DNA of 64,000 bases, taken from Laetmonice hystrix (Eukaryota). Location of the stretch: positions 23,188,001 to 23,252,000 of the forward strand of contig OZ249448.1 of the NCBI GenBank assembly GCA_965235115.1, in the 5' to 3' direction. Positions 11,820 through 57,406 of this stretch are shown here, one piece after another. Below the pieces are notes generated by a model that was given only the letters and a program-made list of their open reading frames with translations, did no database searches and was not told the origin of the DNA. The position numbers and the translations under genes were made by a program. How positions within the stretch are numbered: the first letter of the stretch is position 1; each line of letters opens with the position of its first letter.

Positions 11820-31036
<19,217 letters not shown>

Positions 31037-31831
31037 CACCTGTAGAAGAACATGGAAGAAGACTAGTTGAGTTTTTTTTCATAAAATAAATTTTTATAAG
31101 TTCTGCTGATTTAAAGTTCTGCAAGACATGCCTGGAAACGGAAAGAGGCATGGAAACAGGATGTCGTGTCTTCACACCTTAAAGATGTGAAATACAGCTT
31201 TAAAGATACACAATATCATTGATCTCGTCAAAAAACTTTTTTTATTTTTTTATTTACAACAATATCTAACTATCCAATATAGATATTACAAACTGACAAT
31301 AGAGTTTGTTGGTGATACAAAAACCTAGCGTAATGTGTCTCAGTTTTCTCTCTAGGCCAAAAGAGGATTTTCGATAATTATTCACTCATAGAGAGTATGT
31401 AGCAATTATATGTAATAATGGTGTATAGGTAGCATGTACTGTCAGCATTTTTAGCTGAACTATAGATTTTATTTTCTACCTTTAATGGCATGCTCTCGTG
31501 TTGTGTTGGAGAGAAAAAAAGAAAGATTAGAACCAAGAATGAAAATACCGCTAAGTGTTGTATGGTAAAATCAACTGTATAGGTCATATAATCTTTGAAC
31601 CAATCATCATCCTCTTAATATAATTTTAAACAAGTGTTCATAGTAAATGATGTTGAACAATTTCATATATAAAACCATCCGGAAGAGGCGGTCATAGTTT
31701 TTCATTATCTAATTACCTATCTAATTACCTATCTAATTAGTGACATTTGTAAATAAGGGACGCAGTAGCAATTATTTAATTAAATGTGACGTGAGAAGAC
31801 TTAATTAGCACAGAGTGCCGGTGCCTCTGCA

Positions 31832-35074: not shown

Positions 35075-38000
35075 TTATTGTAATTGAAAGAACGGGTAGT
35101 TGTTGCTCCTACTAATCACACTGGCAACGTCTATGTTGAGCCGGTGTCCCTCCTTGCCAAATTTAAACGGTTTGCAGTTGTCAGAGGTTTCAAACACTCG
35201 CCACAGTGCATCGAGTGCTGCCATTTCCTCAGCTATTGTAACTGTTTCTCCCGGGGCTGAAAAGCAACCAGCCTGGTAAGTGACAGTCTACAGTATACCA
35301 GAACTGAAATACTAGCCTACCCCAGCATTGCTCGAAATCAGATCAAGCAACAACTTTGTTTACACTGACTAATTTAAACTAATTAATAATTTCCAAAAAT
35401 ATCCACTCCGACAAACATACAACATGTATTCATGAACTCTGTGCTTTCCACATTTGATTTTTTTTTTGTTGACATTATTTGATCAGTTTTCATTTTGATT
35501 TCAAGAAGTCTGCTTTGATTTGATACATACCTTTGCCGAGAAGTTGCTGGTTAACATAGATACCCACCATGTACGCCGCCACCATTGTCTCGCTGCCAGT
35601 GTCCCATATTAACCTGAATACATCACAACCATTACATAATCAATGGTCACAGTTACTGCATTGTCCTAACCTGAATATAGCACAACCATTACATAATCAA
35701 TGGTCACAGTTACTGCATTGTCCTAACCTGAATACAGCACAACCATTACATAATCAATGGTCACAGTTACTGCATTGTCCTAACCTGAATATAGCACAAC
35801 CATTACATAATCAATGGTCGCAGTTACTGCATTGTCCTAAAGCTTATAATCTTCATCAGAAATTACCTTCTAACACTAGACTAGGAACTAGACACTTTCT
35901 TCTGATTCATATAAACATAACAGTTAAACTTTTGGACACCGAGTAGAACTAGAAGAGTGACCAACTGACCTAGACTCAGGTTCACTGTGACCAGCCTGAG
36001 TGAGAAGTTGCACTAACAGCCCCATGGGATTGTCAATTTTCCATATATCTGCCACTGTCTTTCCTACCAGCTGGGTCAACACAAAGTCCTGTACAAATAG
36101 CTGTGCACGTTCGACTCCCTGAAAACAAATCATACAAGGATGTTAGACTCATCAAACTACTCCTTCAAATATGTAACACTGAAACAAGACAGGCTGAGAA
36201 GATTTCAATTCACTTATATCTGTTGAATAATTTGTCAGGCCCTATTAAACATTCAGGATCATTCCTGGGCAGCCACGACTGCAGATGGGTAGAAACGGGT
36301 TGCTGACCTGATCCTCAACCAGGGCTCCAACGACAGCCTTGAAGGTTTTACTCAGCGTGCCTTCCTCTGGTGGGAAATCCTATGTTAAAAGAAAAAGTAA
36401 CAAGTTTTTCGAGTTTTTCATGAATAGAGATTATACTGACTTGCCCTGTGAGCCTAACTCTGATCACTTACCTCACAAAGAATAATATCAGAGAATCCCA
36501 AATTGCGAGCAATGTAAGCCAGCATGGAATCTGTCATCAGATGGTTATGTATGGCACTGAAACATGAACAAAAAGTTGAAGCTTCCAACTCACAGTGATC
36601 TGATGAGTAAAGCTGCGTGTCCACAGGTCCGGATGCGGACACGGATACGGATTTTTAAAAACACATTACAAATATAGGGACTGTGTCCACTCATGCGAGT
36701 CCGGACACGGCGACCGATCCGACACAGTCCCAAAATTTGTAATGTGTTTTTAAAAATCCGTATCCGTAACCGTGTCCGCATCTAGACCTGTGGACACGCA
36801 GCTTAAGGGTCCCTCATACCGTGGCCATGATGCCATGCTTAGCCTCTACAGAGTTATAGATAACACATCACAAAGAAAACCCCCAATATCAGGTATGGGT
36901 TAACCGCGCACCTACCTTACACCCTCGTCAGGAAGTTTCGGTAGACAGTGTCTCACATAAGCTTTGATATACTCTGATGATATATATTCCCCTGTAAAAT
37001 CAATATCAGTGTTCCTGTGAAAACGTGGCTGGAGGTTATCTACAGAAACCAGATACTGGCTAATTTACTTTAATAATATGTCCTTTTATAACCAATGACA
37101 AAACACATGTTGTCCATTGTCCAACTTAAGGGAAAAGACACATGTATACAGGGGTATCATAAAAAATGTACAATAATAAGAACAGGGCTTTCATTAATCT
37201 TTTTCCTACCTGGGTCACGACATCCATGATTTTCATTTGGAAGTGCCTTTAGGATACATTTTTTTTCTGGGGTCAAATTGAGTTTTCTAAATTCTTTTCT
37301 TGCATTTATTGTACCAATTGCCTATTGGTGGTGGATGTTGTAACTATACCTATCACTCTACATATAGTTTGCGACACTATTTCTATCCGAGTATATCATT
37401 GAATTTAGTGGTATTTTTGAGACTTCAAGGGAGTTTCTTCTTGCATCATTTCAATAGTTTACATGTGTAATAGACAGTGTACACAGGCTTAATAAAAGCC
37501 CTTAAGAGCATTGTCAATGACATGTTAAATGTTTATTCCAGGTAATGTGCAACCTTTTGCAGCTAATTCTTCGTTATCCTCCAGGGTCATGGATCCTTGG
37601 TCATCTCCAAGACCAAGCTCTGCTCTTCGAGACTCCTCAGCCTTAATATAAGATCTGAAAAAATTTGCAAAGTCCTCACAAATAAAAACTGTATCCATAA
37701 AAATTTACCTTGGCTGAGCCACTAAAAACTTTAAAAAGACTAAAAAGTTTAAGCTAACTTTAAATTTTAATGTAAAATATGGTCATGAGGTTTTAAACTA
37801 AATGTTTTTATCACTGAGAATGACATAAATTTAGATAAAGAAAGAGACAGGATACCATTTTGATGTTTGTTAAATAGGCAGATGGTCATCCTAATACTGA
37901 AGAGGCTACACTTACCTGTGAGTAAACGCGACACGTAGAGTGTCATCCTTGAAAGATTCCCCCAACCTTTTCCCAAAGGCATACATCTCTGCATTGTAGT

Positions 38001-38936
38001 TCCTGAATTTAACAATATCACATGGCTTCTAAGTAATGAATAATGTCACTCTCGGCCAACCCGAGGTCACCTGTCATCAAAATGTACTTGGACTCCTCCA
38101 ACATCTAGACAAAAACATGTAATTGGTTTTTTTTAAATGGTCATTTTTTGAAAGTTCTACTATGGCCTCTTCTCTTGCCATGAAAAATGATTGTGTGCTT
38201 AAATTTGATTTTTTATTTTATTTTTTAAATTCGATATTTTATTTCATGTTAGAACATGTTTATAACTTAAATAAGGGAAACCCCTGATTCTCAGGGTGTG
38301 GCAAATATCACAATCATTTACTATAGCTACCAGTTAATCCATTTTGATCTGTGTCTCTCAGGCTCTGGGCCCTGCTCCAGGCGTCTCCGGTAAAGATCCT
38401 GCATCACTGGGCGTTCCCATCGTTTCCGGCCACGAACACCTTCAATAAATTATGTGTCAAAAGTCACAAATCTCTACCTCTAACAAAATATGACATGTTG
38501 GTTATATTGTTATTGTCAAATATTGATCAATGAAAGACTTGGTTACCGTCTTTTCCGCCTGGCGGCAGCACTATCATCTCGGTCCCCTTGGGCCACATTA
38601 TTATGACTTTAGATAGGTCGACGAAATGCTAATCTATCGCTGGGTGCCGAAGTGCTATTTGTTATGAAATATTATGGTACGTTTAGGAGTTCTTCAACAT
38701 CTCATAGTCATATCACATCTCAGTGAGTCAGTCTCTCGTCATAGTTAGGTTAGGCCAGATTTACCGAGTGATGGGTGGCCGTATGTGTAGGTAATATATT
38801 TAATCAAAAGGAAGGTTACAACATACAAACCTACAACGTTCCATAACTTTGGAACTTGCAAGAAACTATGTCTCCTTGTTATGAAAGCACAGCCCAGGGA
38901 CACTGCAGAAAGCACGTTTCTTCCACAGGCTGCCAT
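35075..38936 (-). CDS. MRPL44: 39S mitochondrial ribosomal protein L44 (mL44), 349 aa, 10 coding exons
   Basis: complement join(38936-38831,38439-38331,38002-37916,37654-37554,36991-36916,36556-36472,36379-36308,36118-35970,35613-35531,35256-35075). All GT-AG and in frame. Peptides include RWERPVMQDLYRRR...GPEPERHRSKWINWNYNAEMYAFGKRLGESF, DFVLTQLVGK...WKIDNPMGLL...EPESRL and PGETVTIAEEMAALDAL, matching the RNase III-like/dsRBD architecture of mL44. The N-terminus is basic and presequence-like. Confidence 0.93.
35609..35838. repeat. Tandem repeat, 57-bp unit, 4 copies, overlapping the MRPL44 exon 9 acceptor
   Basis: aacctgaata...ttgtcct starts at 35611, 35668, 35725 and 35782. Confidence 0.95.
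36611..36803. mobile_element. PIF/Harbinger-like MITE (193 bp) in MRPL44 intron 5
   Basis: TIR agctgcgtgtccacaggtc / gacctgtggacacgcagct, long internal inverted arms, TAA target-site duplication on both sides. Confidence 0.85.
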
Positions 38937-39422
38937 GTTGAAGATGTGAGCCACCTTACAACAATTAAAAAAAGTATTTTTGAAATTAAATTTCCAAATC
39001 TGTATGCTTCTAAGTCTAGTAACAAGTTAAATTAAAGACAAAAAATATATTATGCAAAATCTAGCAAAAGTAACAACAACGAAATTTATCAACAAACGCT
39101 TCCTGATTTTTATTGATAGTATTGGCCGAGATGGTGGGACCTACCGCCAAAATCAAGTAAATTTACCACAACAAACCGAAATCTATCAAAGTTGAATTGA
39201 GTGTAGTCACTTTTGCTCTTTTAGATCACATTAATCACGATAAATTTCCAGCGTATTATACAAACTGATTTCTGTATCATGCTAGATTGACATCACAGTT
39301 GCTGCAAGCAGCAGATTTCAGGGATTTCGATAGGATTCTGGCACTTTCGGTAATTTCGCTAGATTTAGGTATAGAGTCCCACACTCAGCCGGGGTCCGGT
39401 ACGGGCAAGGTGAGAAGTCGTA
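38937..39422. promoter_or_regulatory. Compact divergent promoter region, MRPL44/MRPL57
   Basis: 486 bp between start codons. The MRPL44 start context CAAC-ATG-GCA contains a YY1-like AACATGGC core. Confidence 0.6.
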
Positions 39423-42083
39423 ATGCGGCTCACAACTTGCTTATTGTATTACATTCGAAGACGTCATATACCAGGAAAAATCGATATCGGGTAAGAGGTC
39501 AAATAACAGATAGATCTAGTGTCAAAACTAGAGTTTAAAACAAACTCTAGTTCAAGAAATCGGGATCGAAGTGCCGCATGGGCGATAATAAAAGCAGTGG
39601 CTGGTGGCGAATTTATATTATAGAATTTTTGCACAAGGCAGATGATTCCTGACGCTTGAATCAGTAGGACGTGAGTTGGAACCCCCATAGGGATTTATCT
39701 TTTTCTACCATTATTTTGCCTAGAATGAATTCGTTTATGGATTAGCCTATTAGGGTTATTTTCTTTCGGATTTCAGTTTAGAGTTTGAGGAATGTCTGCC
39801 CTGCGGCCAAGCCGAATTATAGTCGATTCGCCCCAGGCCGGTAGCCTGCGGGCCGGTGGATGTGGTGGGGCTGTGGAGGTTAGGAGCCCGGTAGGGGCAG
39901 CAGTTCCCACCCGGATTGCCCGCTCACTGTACGGTCTACGTGAACCCGCCTACGCAGTGCCGCCGGTATAGTTAGCTGCTCGCTCCCGGCCGGCCCAGTC
40001 TGGACTGGGGCGAACGTCTTTCCAAGTGGGGCGAATAGTCTTCTACCAGTACCATACAGTGGGGCGAATTGTCTTTCCGAGTGGGGCGAATCGACCAGGG
40101 CGAAATGCGAATGAGGCGAATCGACCATCTACCCAGTGAGGCCAAAGAGTATGGTGAGGCTAAACAGTACAGTGAGGCCAAACAGCGGTGGCCTAGTGGG
40201 CATGGGTGTCGACACCTTATGCTATGCGAATGGGTGCAGTAATCTTAGGGCCTGGGTTCGATTCCTGTAGAGGACTATACAACTTTTCTCTTTAGGGACA
40301 TTGTCAAAGTAATTGGGTTACCCCTGATGCCCGTACATTTCAAAAGAAAAATACAGTGAGGCCAAACAGTACAGTGCGGCGTCACTACATGGTACTGGCT
40401 GCCTTGTACCCAAGCAAACAGTACAGTGAGGCCAAACAATTACAATGAGGCCAAACAGTACAGTGAGGCATCACTACATGGTATTGGCTGCCCTTGTACT
40501 CGAGCAAACAGTACAGTGAGGCCATACAGTACAGTGAGGCATCACTACATGGTATTGGCTGCCCTTGTACCGAAGCAAACAGTACAGTGAGGCCAAACAG
40601 TACAGTGAGGCCAAACAGTACAGTGAGGCCAAACAGTACATTGAGGCCAAACAGTAAAGTGAGGCCAAACAGTACAGTGAGGCCAAACAGTACAGTGAGG
40701 CCAAACAGTACATTGAGGCCAAACAGTAAAGTGAGGCCAAACAGTACAGTGAGGCCAAACAGTACAGTGAGGCCAAACAGTACAGTGAGGCCAAACGGTA
40801 CAGTAAAGTTGGTATGCTTCAGGCCTATCTTGCGTCCCAGACTTAGACTTTTACTTCTTTAGTCTTTACTTTGTTCTGGTACCGTCCATAATTGTGCCAA
40901 TTAACAATAACATGAACTGACTTTAATTGAATAGGAAACATCGTATCCATCGCCCTGTAACCTGCTCGCGTAAGAAGGCGGCAATGACGGCAATGGTGCG
41001 AGAGCAACGTAATCTTGATATTCTGCAGAGACCATATTTGACACCAGTAAGGATGCTAGCTTTGATCTCTTATTTTGCAGCTTTACTCCCAAAACAGAAA
41101 GAAGTTAAAGGATACTATGTACAATAGGTTTCTCATCTGTTTTCTAAGCTTGGTAAGATGGTTTCTGATATGCATATCAGGCATTGGAAGATCATGCAAG
41201 TCTAAAAGCAAATACTAAGATCACTACCACTGATCGGAATTTTGGAATATTCCTCAGAGCTATGAGTGAAAAGTTACAAAGGTAATGGTTTTTATGTTAA
41301 GCAGGCCTCACGCGCGAATGGTTTTGAAGGCGGTTCAGCATGGTTCAAAACCTCAATGACATCGCCCAGACACCGTGAGGGTGTTCATCATTGACCGCTA
41401 TCCCGTTTTTGAAACTGCTACTCCCTCCTCAAAAAAATTCCCAGGGGGAAATATTGCATTACTCTTTCCCCCCCCCCTCCAAACTCGCAGCATTCCCCCC
41501 CAAATGTCGAAAATCTCCAGGAAAGCCTGAGGTGGCTAGTAGGTCACAACACGGTCCAGAGGGAGTTGTATTGCGACTCACGACGGTTGATAGCACGGTT
41601 GACAAATGTAAAGCGGTAATGTGCGGTGGTTACACGGTATAGGAAGGGGGCCACATGATGATGATGCGGAAAAGTGCGGTAATCTTGATCTTCATTGAGC
41701 GTGGACAACCGATCACCACCTTCTCCATACCGTGTTTTAACCTAGGAATTTGGGTCCCACTGCCGTCAATTTGGGCGGTTCAGCACAAATTCTGCTGAAC
41801 CACCTTCAAAACTGCCCGCATGACAAGGCCTGCTTTATGTGCCCTACCTGAGTGTGAATGCAGACCTGTATTGAATGCGTGTGTGTTTATACGGTGGTTT
41901 ATTGTGAGATTTCTCTGATTTTGTCCCTTTCAGGAGGAGGATTACCGGCATGAGTGGACCATGGGACTCCCCCGACAAAAATGGCAACAAACAAATACAG
42001 AAAGGATTGAAAAAAACTGGCTCTCCAACAGATTAGCAGCAGACCACTTAGATCTTCTCAATATCTGTAAGAAATGGGAGTAA
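39423..42083 (+). CDS. MRPL57: Mitochondrial ribosomal protein L57 / mL63 (MRP63), 109 aa, 3 coding exons
   Basis: join(39423-39490,40935-41046,41934-42083) gives MRLTTCLLYYIRRRHIPGKIDIGKHRIHRPVTCSRKKAAMTAMVREQRNLDILQRPYLTPEEDYRHEWTMGLPRQKWQQTNTERIEKNWLSNRLAADHLDLLNICKKWE*. It aligns by eye with human MRPL57 (MFLT...RIPGRQWIGKHR...PYMTREQE...DQLDHLNVTKKWS). Donors GG|GTAAGA and CCA|GTAAGG; AATAAA at 42187-42192. Confidence 0.88.
39810..40135. mobile_element. GC-rich non-autonomous element with subterminal inverted repeats and repeated ggggcgaa motifs
   Basis: gtcgattcgcc near the left end and ggcgaatcgac near the right end; several gtggggcgaa copies. Class not determined. Confidence 0.4.
40186..40351 (+). 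mobile_element. tRNA-derived SINE in MRPL57 intron 1
   Basis: A-box TGGCCTAGTGG (40189-40199), B-box GGTTCGATTCC (40255-40265), A-rich 3' end; flanked by tacagtgaggccaaacag on both sides. No cloverleaf could be built. Confidence 0.6.
40352..40805. repeat. Minisatellite, 18-bp unit (aaacagtacagtgaggcc), with larger inserts; also at 40136-40185
   Basis: Direct inspection; source of the MASLYCL/VRPNST periodic ORFs. Confidence 0.95.
41300..41834. mobile_element. PIF/Harbinger-like non-autonomous element (535 bp) with a nested MITE fragment, in MRPL57 intron 2
   Basis: Ends agcaggcct...ttttgaaggcggttcagca / tgctgaaccaccttcaaaa...aggcctgct; TTA on both flanks. Confidence 0.7.
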
Positions 42084-56275: not shown

Positions 56276-57406
56276 ATGTTTTGTCCACATGACCTCCAGT
56301 CGGATCACCACGGCTTAAACATCACAGACCTCCTCAACATTTCGTTTCCACACGTGAACGAAACAAACGAGCAGCTAATCCACGATGTTGTGAGGTTTTA
56401 TTCGTATAACGTAGCGCTTCCGATCATATTTCTGTTCGGGGTGGCAGGGAATTGTATGAACATCGTCATATTTACACGAGGACGATTTCGTCACGCGTTG
56501 GACGAAATCGAAAAGTCCGCGGCTACTGGATTAGTATCACTAGCAGTCTCTGATTTATCATTTTGTGCCGTTGGACTTCCGGCGCCGTTTTTCGCACTAC
56601 CACATCGCCAGGACCACGAAAGGACCATTGATGTGATCGCCCTCTACTATGAAACCTACAAAGCGCCAACGATGAACATATTTATGTTTTCAAGTACGTG
56701 GTTGGTCGTGGCCGTGGCTCTCGAACGATACTTTGCGGTGTGTTTCCCCTTCCATGCTCGTTGGCTGATTAGGATCAATCGCACCATTGGTATTGATATT
56801 GGTATCTACGTGGTCGCTGTGCTTTTCAATATTCCAGGGTTTCTCAAGTATACCATTGAAACCTTAGACTGTCATGACGGTAGTCGGATCCACTTTCTGA
56901 AACCCAGGTTGTTACAGGATGGTTACAGAATAGCCTGGGCTGTGTTGGGGACGTTCTTACCGCTAGTTATACTGATTGTATGTAACGTTCGACTAGCAGT
57001 GGAGATCTACAGGAGTAAGGCCAGGTCGTTGTCCGGAGGAGCAGATCCACCACGGTACAGCTCGTCTAAGATTACATTTATCTTGGTATCCATCATTATG
57101 CTTTATCTCGTCCTCGTATCTCCCTCCATGCTCCTGTCATTCCTCCGGCTCATCCCGGCCGCCCCGAGCAGCAGCCCTGGAGGAGATCACCGCCCGGAGT
57201 CACACGCTGCTCTCTACCGTTACCAGACAGCCACCGTGCTCGCTAACGTGGCTCAAGGGTTTAACTTCGCCGTCAACTTCCTGCTCTACTGTGCCATGAG
57301 TCGACCGTTTCGAGACCACCTCACGGGACAGGTCTGCAAGCGAACCAACTCCCGGACCTCCACCGACACAAATCACCGCTACCAGCTCGTCGAAGTCCAT
57401 ATCTGA
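56276..57406 (+). CDS. Class A (rhodopsin-like) peptide GPCR, FMRFamide-receptor-like group; intronless CDS, 376 aa
   Basis: Seven hydrophobic segments with family motifs: GVAGNCMNIVIF (TM1 GN), LAVSDL (TM2), ALERYFAVCFP (TM3 ERY), FNIP (TM4), FLPLVILIVCN (TM5), VSP (TM6), NFAVNFLLYC (TM7). N-terminal N-glycosylation sequons NIT/NIS/NET. A putative acceptor (cctcag) ends at 56272, 3 nt before the ATG. Confidence 0.93.
   Translation: MFCPHDLQSDHHGLNITDLLNISFPHVNETNEQLIHDVVRFYSYNVALPIIFLFGVAGNCMNIVIFTRGRFRHALDEIEKSAATGLVSLAVSDLSFCAVGLPAPFFALPHRQDHERTIDVIALYYETYKAPTMNIFMFSSTWLVVAVALERYFAVCFPFHARWLIRINRTIGIDIGIYVVAVLFNIPGFLKYTIETLDCHDGSRIHFLKPRLLQDGYRIAWAVLGTFLPLVILIVCNVRLAVEIYRSKARSLSGGADPPRYSSSKITFILVSIIMLYLVLVSPSMLLSFLRLIPAAPSSSPGGDHRPESHAALYRYQTATVLANVAQGFNFAVNFLLYCAMSRPFRDHLTGQVCKRTNSRTSTDTNHRYQLVEVHI

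What the first reader, a model, noticed from the sequence alone, without database searches (positions are those of the whole stretch)
35075..42083. Two mitoribosomal large-subunit genes (MRPL44 and MRPL57/mL63) head-to-head across a 486-bp spacer
Seen in sequence: the MRPL44 ATG at 38936 (-) and the MRPL57 ATG at 39423 (+) are 486 bp apart. MRPL57 is split into 68+112+150-nt exons that the ORF track does not join. Established: both proteins belong to the same mitoribosomal large subunit; in human they are unlinked (MRPL44 on chr2, MRPL57 on chr13). Inference: one bidirectional promoter could couple production of two subunits of one complex, an operon-like arrangement in an animal genome that may be lineage-specific and easily missed by annotation.
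Basis: partly seen in the sequence, partly recalled or inferred. Interest (0 to 1): 0.7.

Follow-up and report, generated by a model that had tools for sequence, protein, structure and literature searches.

The report
Ancient head-to-head mitoribosomal gene pair
Two genes for proteins of the same mitochondrial ribosome subunit (mL44 and mL63) sit back to back 486 bases apart here, and the same pairing turns up in molluscs, a brachiopod, a ribbon worm, an annelid and a priapulid, so it is an old, retained arrangement and not a quirk of this genome.

Summary
A 10-exon mL44/MRPL44 gene (minus strand, 38936..35075, 349 aa) and a 3-exon mL63/MRPL57 gene (plus strand, 39423..42083, 109 aa) lie head to head, with exactly 486 bp between their ATGs. 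All splice sites are GT-AG. Both genes are single-locus in the 627-Mb assembly.

Pfam, PDB and local HMM tests confirm both identities. No RNA run exists for this organism, so the junctions rest on homology. Exon sizes of 68 and 112 nt recur in other phyla.

The same divergent pair occurs in these species:
- Haliotis: 195 bp between ATGs
- Potamilus: 227 bp
- Lingula: 224 bp
- Lineus: 211 bp
- Priapulus: 368 bp
- Capitella: loosened, at most 8 kb

The outer neighbours differ by Pfam content wherever they could be compared. I found no mL63 within 10 kb upstream of mL44 in Candidula, Adineta, Acanthaster, Branchiostoma or Glandiceps.

The pair therefore dates at least to the protostome ancestor. 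It most likely persists because of a shared bidirectional promoter region, which is inferred and not shown. It is a new member of a known kind, like HSPD1-HSPE1. I found no paper describing it.

The parts
38831..38936 (-). mL44 exon 1 (ATG at 38936; basic N-terminus, presumed mitochondrial presequence)
   Evidence: GT donor. There is no acidic residue before position 44. This is the only exon that has no HMM hit of its own.
38331..38439 (-). mL44 exon 2
   Evidence: splice sites. HMM positions 35-71, 29.7 bits.
37916..38002 (-). mL44 exon 3
   Evidence: PF22935 positions 1-29, 37.4 bits.
37554..37654 (-). mL44 exon 4
   Evidence: PF22935 positions 31-65, 13.8 bits; 24.9 bits.
36916..36991 (-). 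mL44 exon 5
   Evidence: PF22935 positions 68-90, 19.7 bits.
36472..36556 (-). mL44 exon 6
   Evidence: PF22935 positions 92-119, 31.6 bits.
36308..36379 (-). mL44 exon 7
   Evidence: PF22935 positions 120-139, 17.8 bits.
35970..36118 (-). mL44 exon 8
   Evidence: matches human mL44 residues 207-255 (3j7y_c), E 1.5e-10.
35531..35613 (-). mL44 exon 9
   Evidence: HMM positions 260-290, 35.8 bits.
35075..35256 (-). mL44 exon 10, with the stop codon at 35077-35075
   Evidence: HMM positions 289-332, 43.6 bits.
38937..39422 (.). 486-bp spacer between the two ATGs; it must hold both 5' UTRs and the presumed bidirectional promoter region
   Evidence: The equivalent spacers in five other phyla or classes are 195-368 bp.
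39423..39490 (+). mL63 exon 1 (68 nt)
   Evidence: 61% identical to Capitella exon 1; 18.2 bits against the leave-one-out HMM. The 68-nt size recurs in Haliotis, Lingula and Capitella.
40935..41046 (+). mL63 exon 2 (112 nt)
   Evidence: PF14978 positions 8-43, 29.2 bits, above the 27-bit cut-off. The same 112-nt exon occurs in five other species.
41934..42083 (+). mL63 exon 3 (150 nt including the stop)
   Evidence: PF14978 positions 45-92, 21.5 bits; the five best PDB matches are all the C-terminus of mL63.

Best explanation
These are the single-copy nuclear genes for two proteins of the mitochondrial ribosome's large subunit. mL44 (MRPL44) is a 10-exon gene on the minus strand. mL63 (MRPL57/MRP63) is a 3-exon gene on the plus strand. 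They are transcribed away from each other, with 486 bp between the start codons. This is one instance of an old, conserved divergent gene pair that dates at least to the last common ancestor of protostomes. The most likely reason it persists is that the short AT-rich spacer acts as one bidirectional promoter region. Both core promoters and their shared upstream elements would overlap there, so any break between the genes would damage at least one essential gene, and the two subunits would be made in step. Shown here: the gene identities, the exon structures, single-copy status, the spacing, and conservation of orientation and tight spacing across lineages whose flanking genes differ. Inferred: the transcription start sites, promoter sharing and co-expression.
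For: Identity of mL44:
- Exons 3-7 tile Pfam PF22935 positions 1-139 in order.
- Exon 8 matches human mL44 residues 207-255, E 1.5e-10.
- The spliced protein scores 443 bits (E 9.5e-134) against an HMM of 12 mL44 orthologues. Nine of its ten exons also hit individually in collinear order.
- BLASTP against the chiton orthologue gives E 1.5e-127.

Identity of mL63:
- Exons 2 and 3 hit PF14978 positions 8-43 and 45-92.
- An HMM built only from six other species' mL63 scores the spliced protein at 95.8 bits, E 2.8e-28, and hits nothing else in the 64 kb.

Copy number: each family gives a single locus in the 627-Mb assembly.

Conserved pair: MRP-63 on the minus strand and mL44 on the plus strand are called head to head in Potamilus, Haliotis, Priapulus, Lingula and Lineus. 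ATG-to-ATG spacers are 227, 195, 368, 224 and 211 bp. In Capitella the pair is divergent and at most 8 kb apart.

Only the pair is kept: the outer neighbours differ wherever they could be compared by Pfam family, for example GIT and a GPCR here, astacin, UDPGT, CLAMP and an MFS transporter, an ankyrin-repeat gene, and SET with glycosyltransferase 61. Haliotis's neighbours and one of Lingula's have no Pfam family on record.

Intron positions and exon sizes of mL63 (68 and 112 nt) are conserved.

Contigs from DNA runs bridge the spacer.
Against: There is no expression data for this organism, so start sites, promoter sharing and co-expression are untested. The six tight spacers share no statistically supported motif. 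Only AT-rich k-mers recur. The best GC-containing candidate, CGAAA[CG]T, occurs in 5 of 6 spacers, with a family-wise p of about 0.1. No mL63 was detected within 10 kb upstream of mL44 in a stylommatophoran snail, a bdelloid rotifer, a starfish, amphioxus and an acorn worm. By established knowledge the two genes are also unlinked in human. Coupling is therefore dispensable. A very short spacer is also a small target for breakpoints, so some persistence would be expected without selection.
Confidence: 0.72

Rival explanations
1. The adjacency is retained neutrally. The two genes have independent promoters that happen to lie close together. The pair survives only because a 200-500 bp spacer offers very few viable breakpoints, not because co-regulation is selected.
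For: No conserved spacer motif reaches significance. The pair has been lost repeatedly without obvious harm, in Candidula, Adineta and three deuterostomes. In Branchiostoma mL44 is instead head to head with ETFDH at 261 bp, and in Candidula with a DEP-domain gene at 518 bp.
Against: The pair is kept in seven lineages, including this window, that span both protostome super-clades. Their outer neighbours differ wherever they could be compared. The partners belong to the same complex, as in the co-regulated pairs HSPD1-HSPE1 and HADHA-HADHB (PMC3514665).
Confidence: 0.22
2. One reading: a recent, lineage-specific juxtaposition of two otherwise unlinked genes.
For: By established knowledge the two genes are unlinked in human. 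The 486-bp spacer here is the longest of the tight pairs.
Against: The same divergent pair is present in Haliotis, Potamilus, Lingula, Lineus, Capitella and Priapulus.
Confidence: 0.02
3. The small three-exon ORF is a chance ORF, or a family other than mL63.
For: Each exon alone gives only weak PDB matches (E 0.7-1), and exon 1 alone gives none.
Against: Exon 2 alone passes the Pfam cut-off. The leave-one-out HMM gives 95.8 bits end to end. Intron positions are conserved. It is the only PF14978 locus in the genome.
Confidence: 0.01

Closest known systems
HSPD1-HSPE1 (mitochondrial chaperonin 60/10), a conserved bidirectional pair and the type example of a co-regulated conserved ancient microsyntenic pair (Irimia et al. 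2012, PMC3514665)
   Same: Two nuclear genes for subunits of one mitochondrial complex, in 5'-5' orientation with a spacer under 1 kb. The arrangement is kept across distant animal phyla and lost in some lineages.
   Different: For HSPD1-HSPE1, promoter sharing and co-expression have been shown experimentally, and the pair is kept in human. The mL63-mL44 pair is absent from human and from the three invertebrate deuterostomes sampled, so human-anchored surveys cannot see it. Its promoter is untested.
HADHA-HADHB (mitochondrial trifunctional protein alpha and beta), a head-to-head pair
   Same: A divergent pair encoding two subunits of one mitochondrial complex, listed among the strongly co-expressed conserved pairs (PMC3514665).
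   Different: It is present in human and encodes an enzyme complex rather than ribosomal proteins.
Bacterial ribosomal-protein operons
   Same: Genes for parts of one ribosome are kept next to each other.
   Different: An operon is one polycistronic transcript. These two genes diverge, so they cannot share a transcript. Any coupling would be at the promoter.

Membership tests
mL44 (MRPL44) | RNase III-like 'RM44 endonuclease' domain (Pfam PF22935) | tested here: met
   Exons 3-7 tile profile positions 1-139 in order (37.4, 13.8, 19.7, 31.6 and 17.8 bits). The genome scan finds only this locus.
mL44 (MRPL44) | C-terminal dsRBD-like domain (Pfam PF22892) | tested here: inconclusive
   Exons 8-10 give no Pfam hit on their own. 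They do align to orthologues that carry PF22892, up to HMM position 332, and exon 8 matches human mL44 residues 207-255. The spliced protein was not given to Pfam, because it has no reference.
mL44 (MRPL44) | Full-length orthology to proteins solved in the mitoribosome | tested here: met
   Exon 8's best PDB matches are mL44 chains (3j7y_c, 4v1a_h). The spliced protein scores 443 bits against an HMM of 12 mL44 orthologues.
mL63 (MRPL57/MRP63) | MRP-63 domain (Pfam PF14978) over the whole short protein | tested here: met
   Exon 2 covers positions 8-43 at 29.2 bits, above the 27-bit cut-off. Exon 3 covers positions 45-92 at 21.5 bits. The leave-one-out HMM gives 95.8 bits.
mL63 (MRPL57/MRP63) | Conserved C-terminal HLN..KKWE-type end, as in the solved mL63 chains | tested here: met
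   the five best PDB matches are mL63 C-termini (human residues 83-101). One search shows the alignment.
Co-regulated conserved microsyntenic pair (bidirectional-promoter type; criteria of PMC3514665) | 5'-5' orientation, conserved across lineages | tested here: met
   The pair is divergent in the window and in six other species.
Co-regulated conserved microsyntenic pair (bidirectional-promoter type; criteria of PMC3514665) | Intergenic distance below 1 kb | tested here: met
   195-486 bp between ATGs in six of seven lineages. Capitella is the exception, at up to 8 kb.
Co-regulated conserved microsyntenic pair (bidirectional-promoter type; criteria of PMC3514665) | Correlated expression of the two genes | not testable with these tools
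   No RNA run holds the sequence.
Co-regulated conserved microsyntenic pair (bidirectional-promoter type; criteria of PMC3514665) | Conserved intergenic sequence | tested here: inconclusive
   Only AT-rich k-mers are shared. CGAAA[CG]T occurs in 5 of 6 spacers, with a family-wise p of about 0.1.
Operon | Genes on one strand sharing one transcript | tested here: not met
   The genes are on opposite strands and diverge.

The most novel reading that the evidence does not exclude
The pairing is as old as mL63 itself. mL63 is reported as a metazoan gain and mL44 as an older, opisthokont gain (PMC6367999). The short, poorly conserved mL63 gene could have arisen from the divergent upstream transcript of the mL44 promoter in an early animal. 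It would then have been recruited into the same ribosomal subunit and stayed there in protostomes, with secondary separation in deuterostomes. My data show only that the pair predates the protostome ancestor. No cnidarian, sponge, placozoan or xenacoelomorph locus could be examined.
Probability: 0.1. Interest if true: 0.8.

Novelty: new member of a known kind. Interest (0 to 1): 0.45.

Why it matters
It adds a clean case to the short list of divergent gene pairs that encode two parts of one mitochondrial machine and have stayed together for more than half a billion years. Human-anchored synteny surveys cannot find this one, because vertebrates lack it. It gives a compact natural element of 195-486 bp in which to ask how nuclear genes for mitoribosomal proteins are co-ordinated in invertebrates. 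It also provides a rare genomic character (pair kept or lost) that can be scored across animal phyla. Finally, it opens a testable question about where the animal-specific protein mL63 came from.

Tried and rejected
- RNA support: the look-up of sequencing runs found only three runs, all of one sample and none on record as RNA. Junctions and start sites are therefore unsupported by reads. I used read laying only to check that the DNA is contiguous.
- Exon 1 of mL63 against PDB gave no hit.
- My first Pfam call used wrong frames for some mL44 exons and one call failed on stop codons. One search corrected this.
- Whole spliced proteins were not sent to Pfam, structure or complex tools. I used exon-wise searches and local HMMs instead.
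- Shared spacer motifs were not significant, either as exact k-mers or as degenerate 7-mers.
- The metagenome scan for more loci gave 15 loci, mostly short. L020 is the only one with a clear stretch upstream of mL44 exon 1 (about 3 kb), and it shows no mL63 exon. Its organism is unknown.
- I considered that vertebrates split the pair by reciprocal loss after whole-genome duplication, because MRPL44 lies in the COL4A3|4 block, whose sister block is on human chr13 (PMC12141075). This is not supported. Amphioxus, an acorn worm and a starfish already lack the tight pair.
- Placing the window's species failed. Its mL44 is unresolved among lophotrochozoan lineages, with at most 52-56% identity to any of them.
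- The literature search found no paper on this pair. The supplement of PMC8851819 has no entry for either gene, and no supplement of PMC3514665 is held.
Full report
**1. Observation**

The window holds an ATG at 38936 on the minus strand and an ATG at 39423 on the plus strand. The stretch between them, 38937-39422, is 486 bp.

The plus-strand gene joins 39423-39490 (68 nt), 40935-41046 (112 nt) and 41934-42083 (150 nt). Its donors are GTAAG and GTAAG, its acceptors are AATAG and TTCAG, and the product is an uninterrupted 109-aa ORF.

I rebuilt the minus-strand gene from the sequence. It has ten exons between 38936 and 35075, every intron is GT..AG, and it gives a 349-aa ORF that ends at the stop codon 35077-35075.

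The spacer is AT-rich, at 31-46% GC in 200-bp windows, and is not a CpG island. It contains no tRNA and no Rfam family.

Logan contigs of DNA runs X2 and X3 come from one sample of one study, which may be the source of the assembly. They bridge 38759-39617 and 38759-39642 with a few SNPs and small indels. The adjacency is therefore real DNA and not a scaffold join.

**2. Gene identities**

*mL44*
- Exons 3, 4, 5, 6 and 7 match Pfam PF22935 (RM44 endonuclease domain) at profile positions 1-29, 31-65, 68-90, 92-119 and 120-139, in order and without overlap.
- Exon 8 matches human mL44 residues 207-255 (3j7y chain c) at E 1.5e-10.
- The spliced protein aligns end to end with named mL44 orthologues, for example E 1.5e-127 and 52% identity to a chiton.
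- It scores 443 bits against an HMM of 12 orthologues. Nine of the ten exons also score individually in collinear order. The exception is exon 1, the presumed presequence.

*mL63*
- Exon 2 alone passes the Pfam cut-off for PF14978 (29.2 bits, positions 8-43). Exon 3 continues at positions 45-92 with 21.5 bits.
- The best PDB matches of exons 2 and 3 are mL63 chains. Each match is weak on its own, but they are collinear.
- An HMM built only from the mL63 genes of six other species scores the spliced window protein at 95.8 bits (E 2.8e-28). It hits each exon separately and nothing else in the 64 kb.

Each family has a single locus in the 627-Mb, 35-contig assembly.

**3. Junction support without RNA**

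No RNA run holds this stretch, so I tested the junctions by comparison with other species. In Haliotis, Potamilus, Lingula, Lineus, Priapulus and Capitella the mL63 gene has the same three-exon plan, with introns at the same codon positions.
- Exon 1 is 68 nt in the window, Haliotis, Lingula and Capitella.
- Exon 2 is 112 nt in the window, Potamilus, Haliotis, Lingula, Lineus and Capitella.
- Window exon 1 is 61% identical to Capitella exon 1.

This is strong indirect support. It does not replace reads.

**4. Synteny survey**

Using mL44 exon 8 I collected orthologues. An alignment of twelve of them gave more. I then fetched their genomic loci.

| Species | Group | Gene upstream of mL44 | ATG-to-ATG spacer |
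|---|---|---|---|
| This window | unresolved lophotrochozoan | mL63, divergent | 486 bp |
| Potamilus streckersoni | bivalve | mL63, divergent | 227 bp |
| Haliotis rubra | gastropod | mL63, divergent | 195 bp |
| Priapulus caudatus | priapulid (Ecdysozoa) | mL63, divergent | 368 bp |
| Lingula anatina | brachiopod | mL63, divergent | 224 bp |
| Lineus longissimus | nemertean | mL63, divergent | 211 bp |
| Capitella teleta | annelid | mL63, divergent | at most about 8 kb |
| Candidula unifasciata | gastropod | DEP-domain gene, head to head | 518 bp |
| Adineta steineri | rotifer | a cullin gene, same strand | not a divergent pair |
| Acanthaster planci | starfish | UDPGT gene, about 3.9 kb away | about 3.9 kb |
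| Branchiostoma floridae | amphioxus | ETFDH, head to head | 261 bp |
| Glandiceps talaboti | acorn worm | PANTS-like gene, same strand | not a divergent pair |

I confirmed that the called gene ends are the start codons, so the spacers in the table are ATG to ATG.

In Capitella both public models are wrong at the 5' end. The true mL63 ATG is at L005:4408, and the true mL44 exon 2 is at L005:12577-12687. The genes are divergent and at most about 8 kb apart.

For the last five species in the table, neither tblastn nor the mL63 HMM finds any mL63 exon within 10 kb upstream of mL44.

The outer neighbours of the conserved pairs differ wherever they could be compared by Pfam content. Here they are GIT and a GPCR. 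Elsewhere they include astacin, UDPGT, CLAMP with an MFS transporter, an ankyrin-repeat gene, and SET with glycosyltransferase 61. Haliotis's neighbours and one of Lingula's have no Pfam family on record. What is conserved is the pair, not the wider neighbourhood.

**5. Age**

The pair occurs in Priapulida (Ecdysozoa) and in several lophotrochozoan phyla, so it predates the protostome ancestor. My data do not decide whether it is older, with a loss in deuterostomes, or arose on the protostome stem.

By established knowledge human MRPL44 is on 2q36 and MRPL57 on 13q12. PMC12141075 places MRPL44 beside COL4A3 in vertebrates.

**6. Mechanism**

Spacers of 195-486 bp must contain two 5' UTRs and two core promoters. 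That is the accepted signature of a bidirectional promoter (PMC3514665). The partners are parts of one complex, as in HSPD1-HSPE1 and HADHA-HADHB.

I therefore read the spacer as a shared promoter region that keeps the two genes co-expressed and resists rearrangement. This is inference.

The spacers share no significant motif. The best candidate is CGAAA[CG]T, which occurs in 5 of 6 spacers, mostly within about 120 nt of the mL63 ATG. The neutral 'small target' model stays a live rival, at about 0.2.

**7. Comparison with what is known, and novelty**

The class is known: co-regulated conserved ancient microsyntenic pairs. This particular pair did not turn up in the paper library or in the supplement I could search. 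It would escape human-anchored surveys. Public annotations of several genomes already show the two genes side by side, without comment.

It is a new member of a known kind and of moderate interest.

Noticed in passing
window 35610-35840 (mL44 intron 8 / start of exon 9): A 57-bp minisatellite (4.1 copies, 97% alike) includes the 3' splice site and the first 4 nt of exon 9. Three upstream decoy copies of 'tattcag|gtta' therefore precede the real acceptor. Read from the sequence, using a decoy would add 57 nt and run into an in-frame TGA.
   Followed up: partly
window 38536-38757 (mL44 intron 1): A very high-copy repeat. Summed contig depth is about 30,000-70,000, against about 50 on either side, and many loose ends begin and end here. 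It is probably a SINE-like element.
   Followed up: no
window 39800-40100 and 40134-40804 (mL63 intron 1): A GC-rich block (61-66% GC) is followed by an 18-bp minisatellite (12.7 copies at 40576-40804) nested in 71- and 89-bp higher-order repeats. tRNA-like stretches near 39600 and 40190 are not called as tRNAs.
   Followed up: partly
window about 20900-31040 (+) and 56276-57406 (+): ORF fragments of a GIT-type ArfGAP gene end about 4 kb from the 3' end of mL44, tail to tail. A single-exon 376-aa seven-helix-receptor-like ORF lies 14 kb beyond mL63.
   Followed up: no
L007:9739-10001 (Branchiostoma floridae): In amphioxus mL44 is head to head with ETFDH, another mitochondrial protein gene, 261 bp apart. 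A DHHC palmitoyltransferase gene lies just downstream. The mL44 promoter seems to be bidirectional there with a different mitochondrial partner.
   Followed up: no
L005:2966-4408 and L005:10001-12687 (Capitella teleta): Both public gene models look wrong at the 5' end. The 210-aa MRP-63 model lacks the true first exon (4408-4341). The mL44 model P0054 starts with unrelated sequence and reads the true exon 2 (12577-12687) in another frame.
   Followed up: yes
L009 (Haliotis rubra), protein P0068: The RefSeq product 'uncharacterized protein LOC124260815' (536 aa) is the abalone mL44, over-long and unnamed. It is 60% identical to window mL44 residues 34-136.
   Followed up: partly
L009:9845-9856 and L012:9812-9823 (spacers of Haliotis and Lingula): The two spacers share an exact 12-mer, TAGTTTCGCATT, at nearly the same distance (40 and 36 nt) from the mL63 ATG. 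By my rough estimate (not a tool result) a 12-mer match in one such pair has a chance of about 0.005. That is not significant once all 15 pairs are counted.
   Followed up: partly
L012:5176-6777 (Lingula) and L006:1-6087 (Acanthaster): A UDP-glucuronosyltransferase gene lies next to the locus in both Lingula (beyond mL63) and Acanthaster (upstream of mL44, where no mL63 is found), in different orientations. This may be coincidence in a large family.
   Followed up: no
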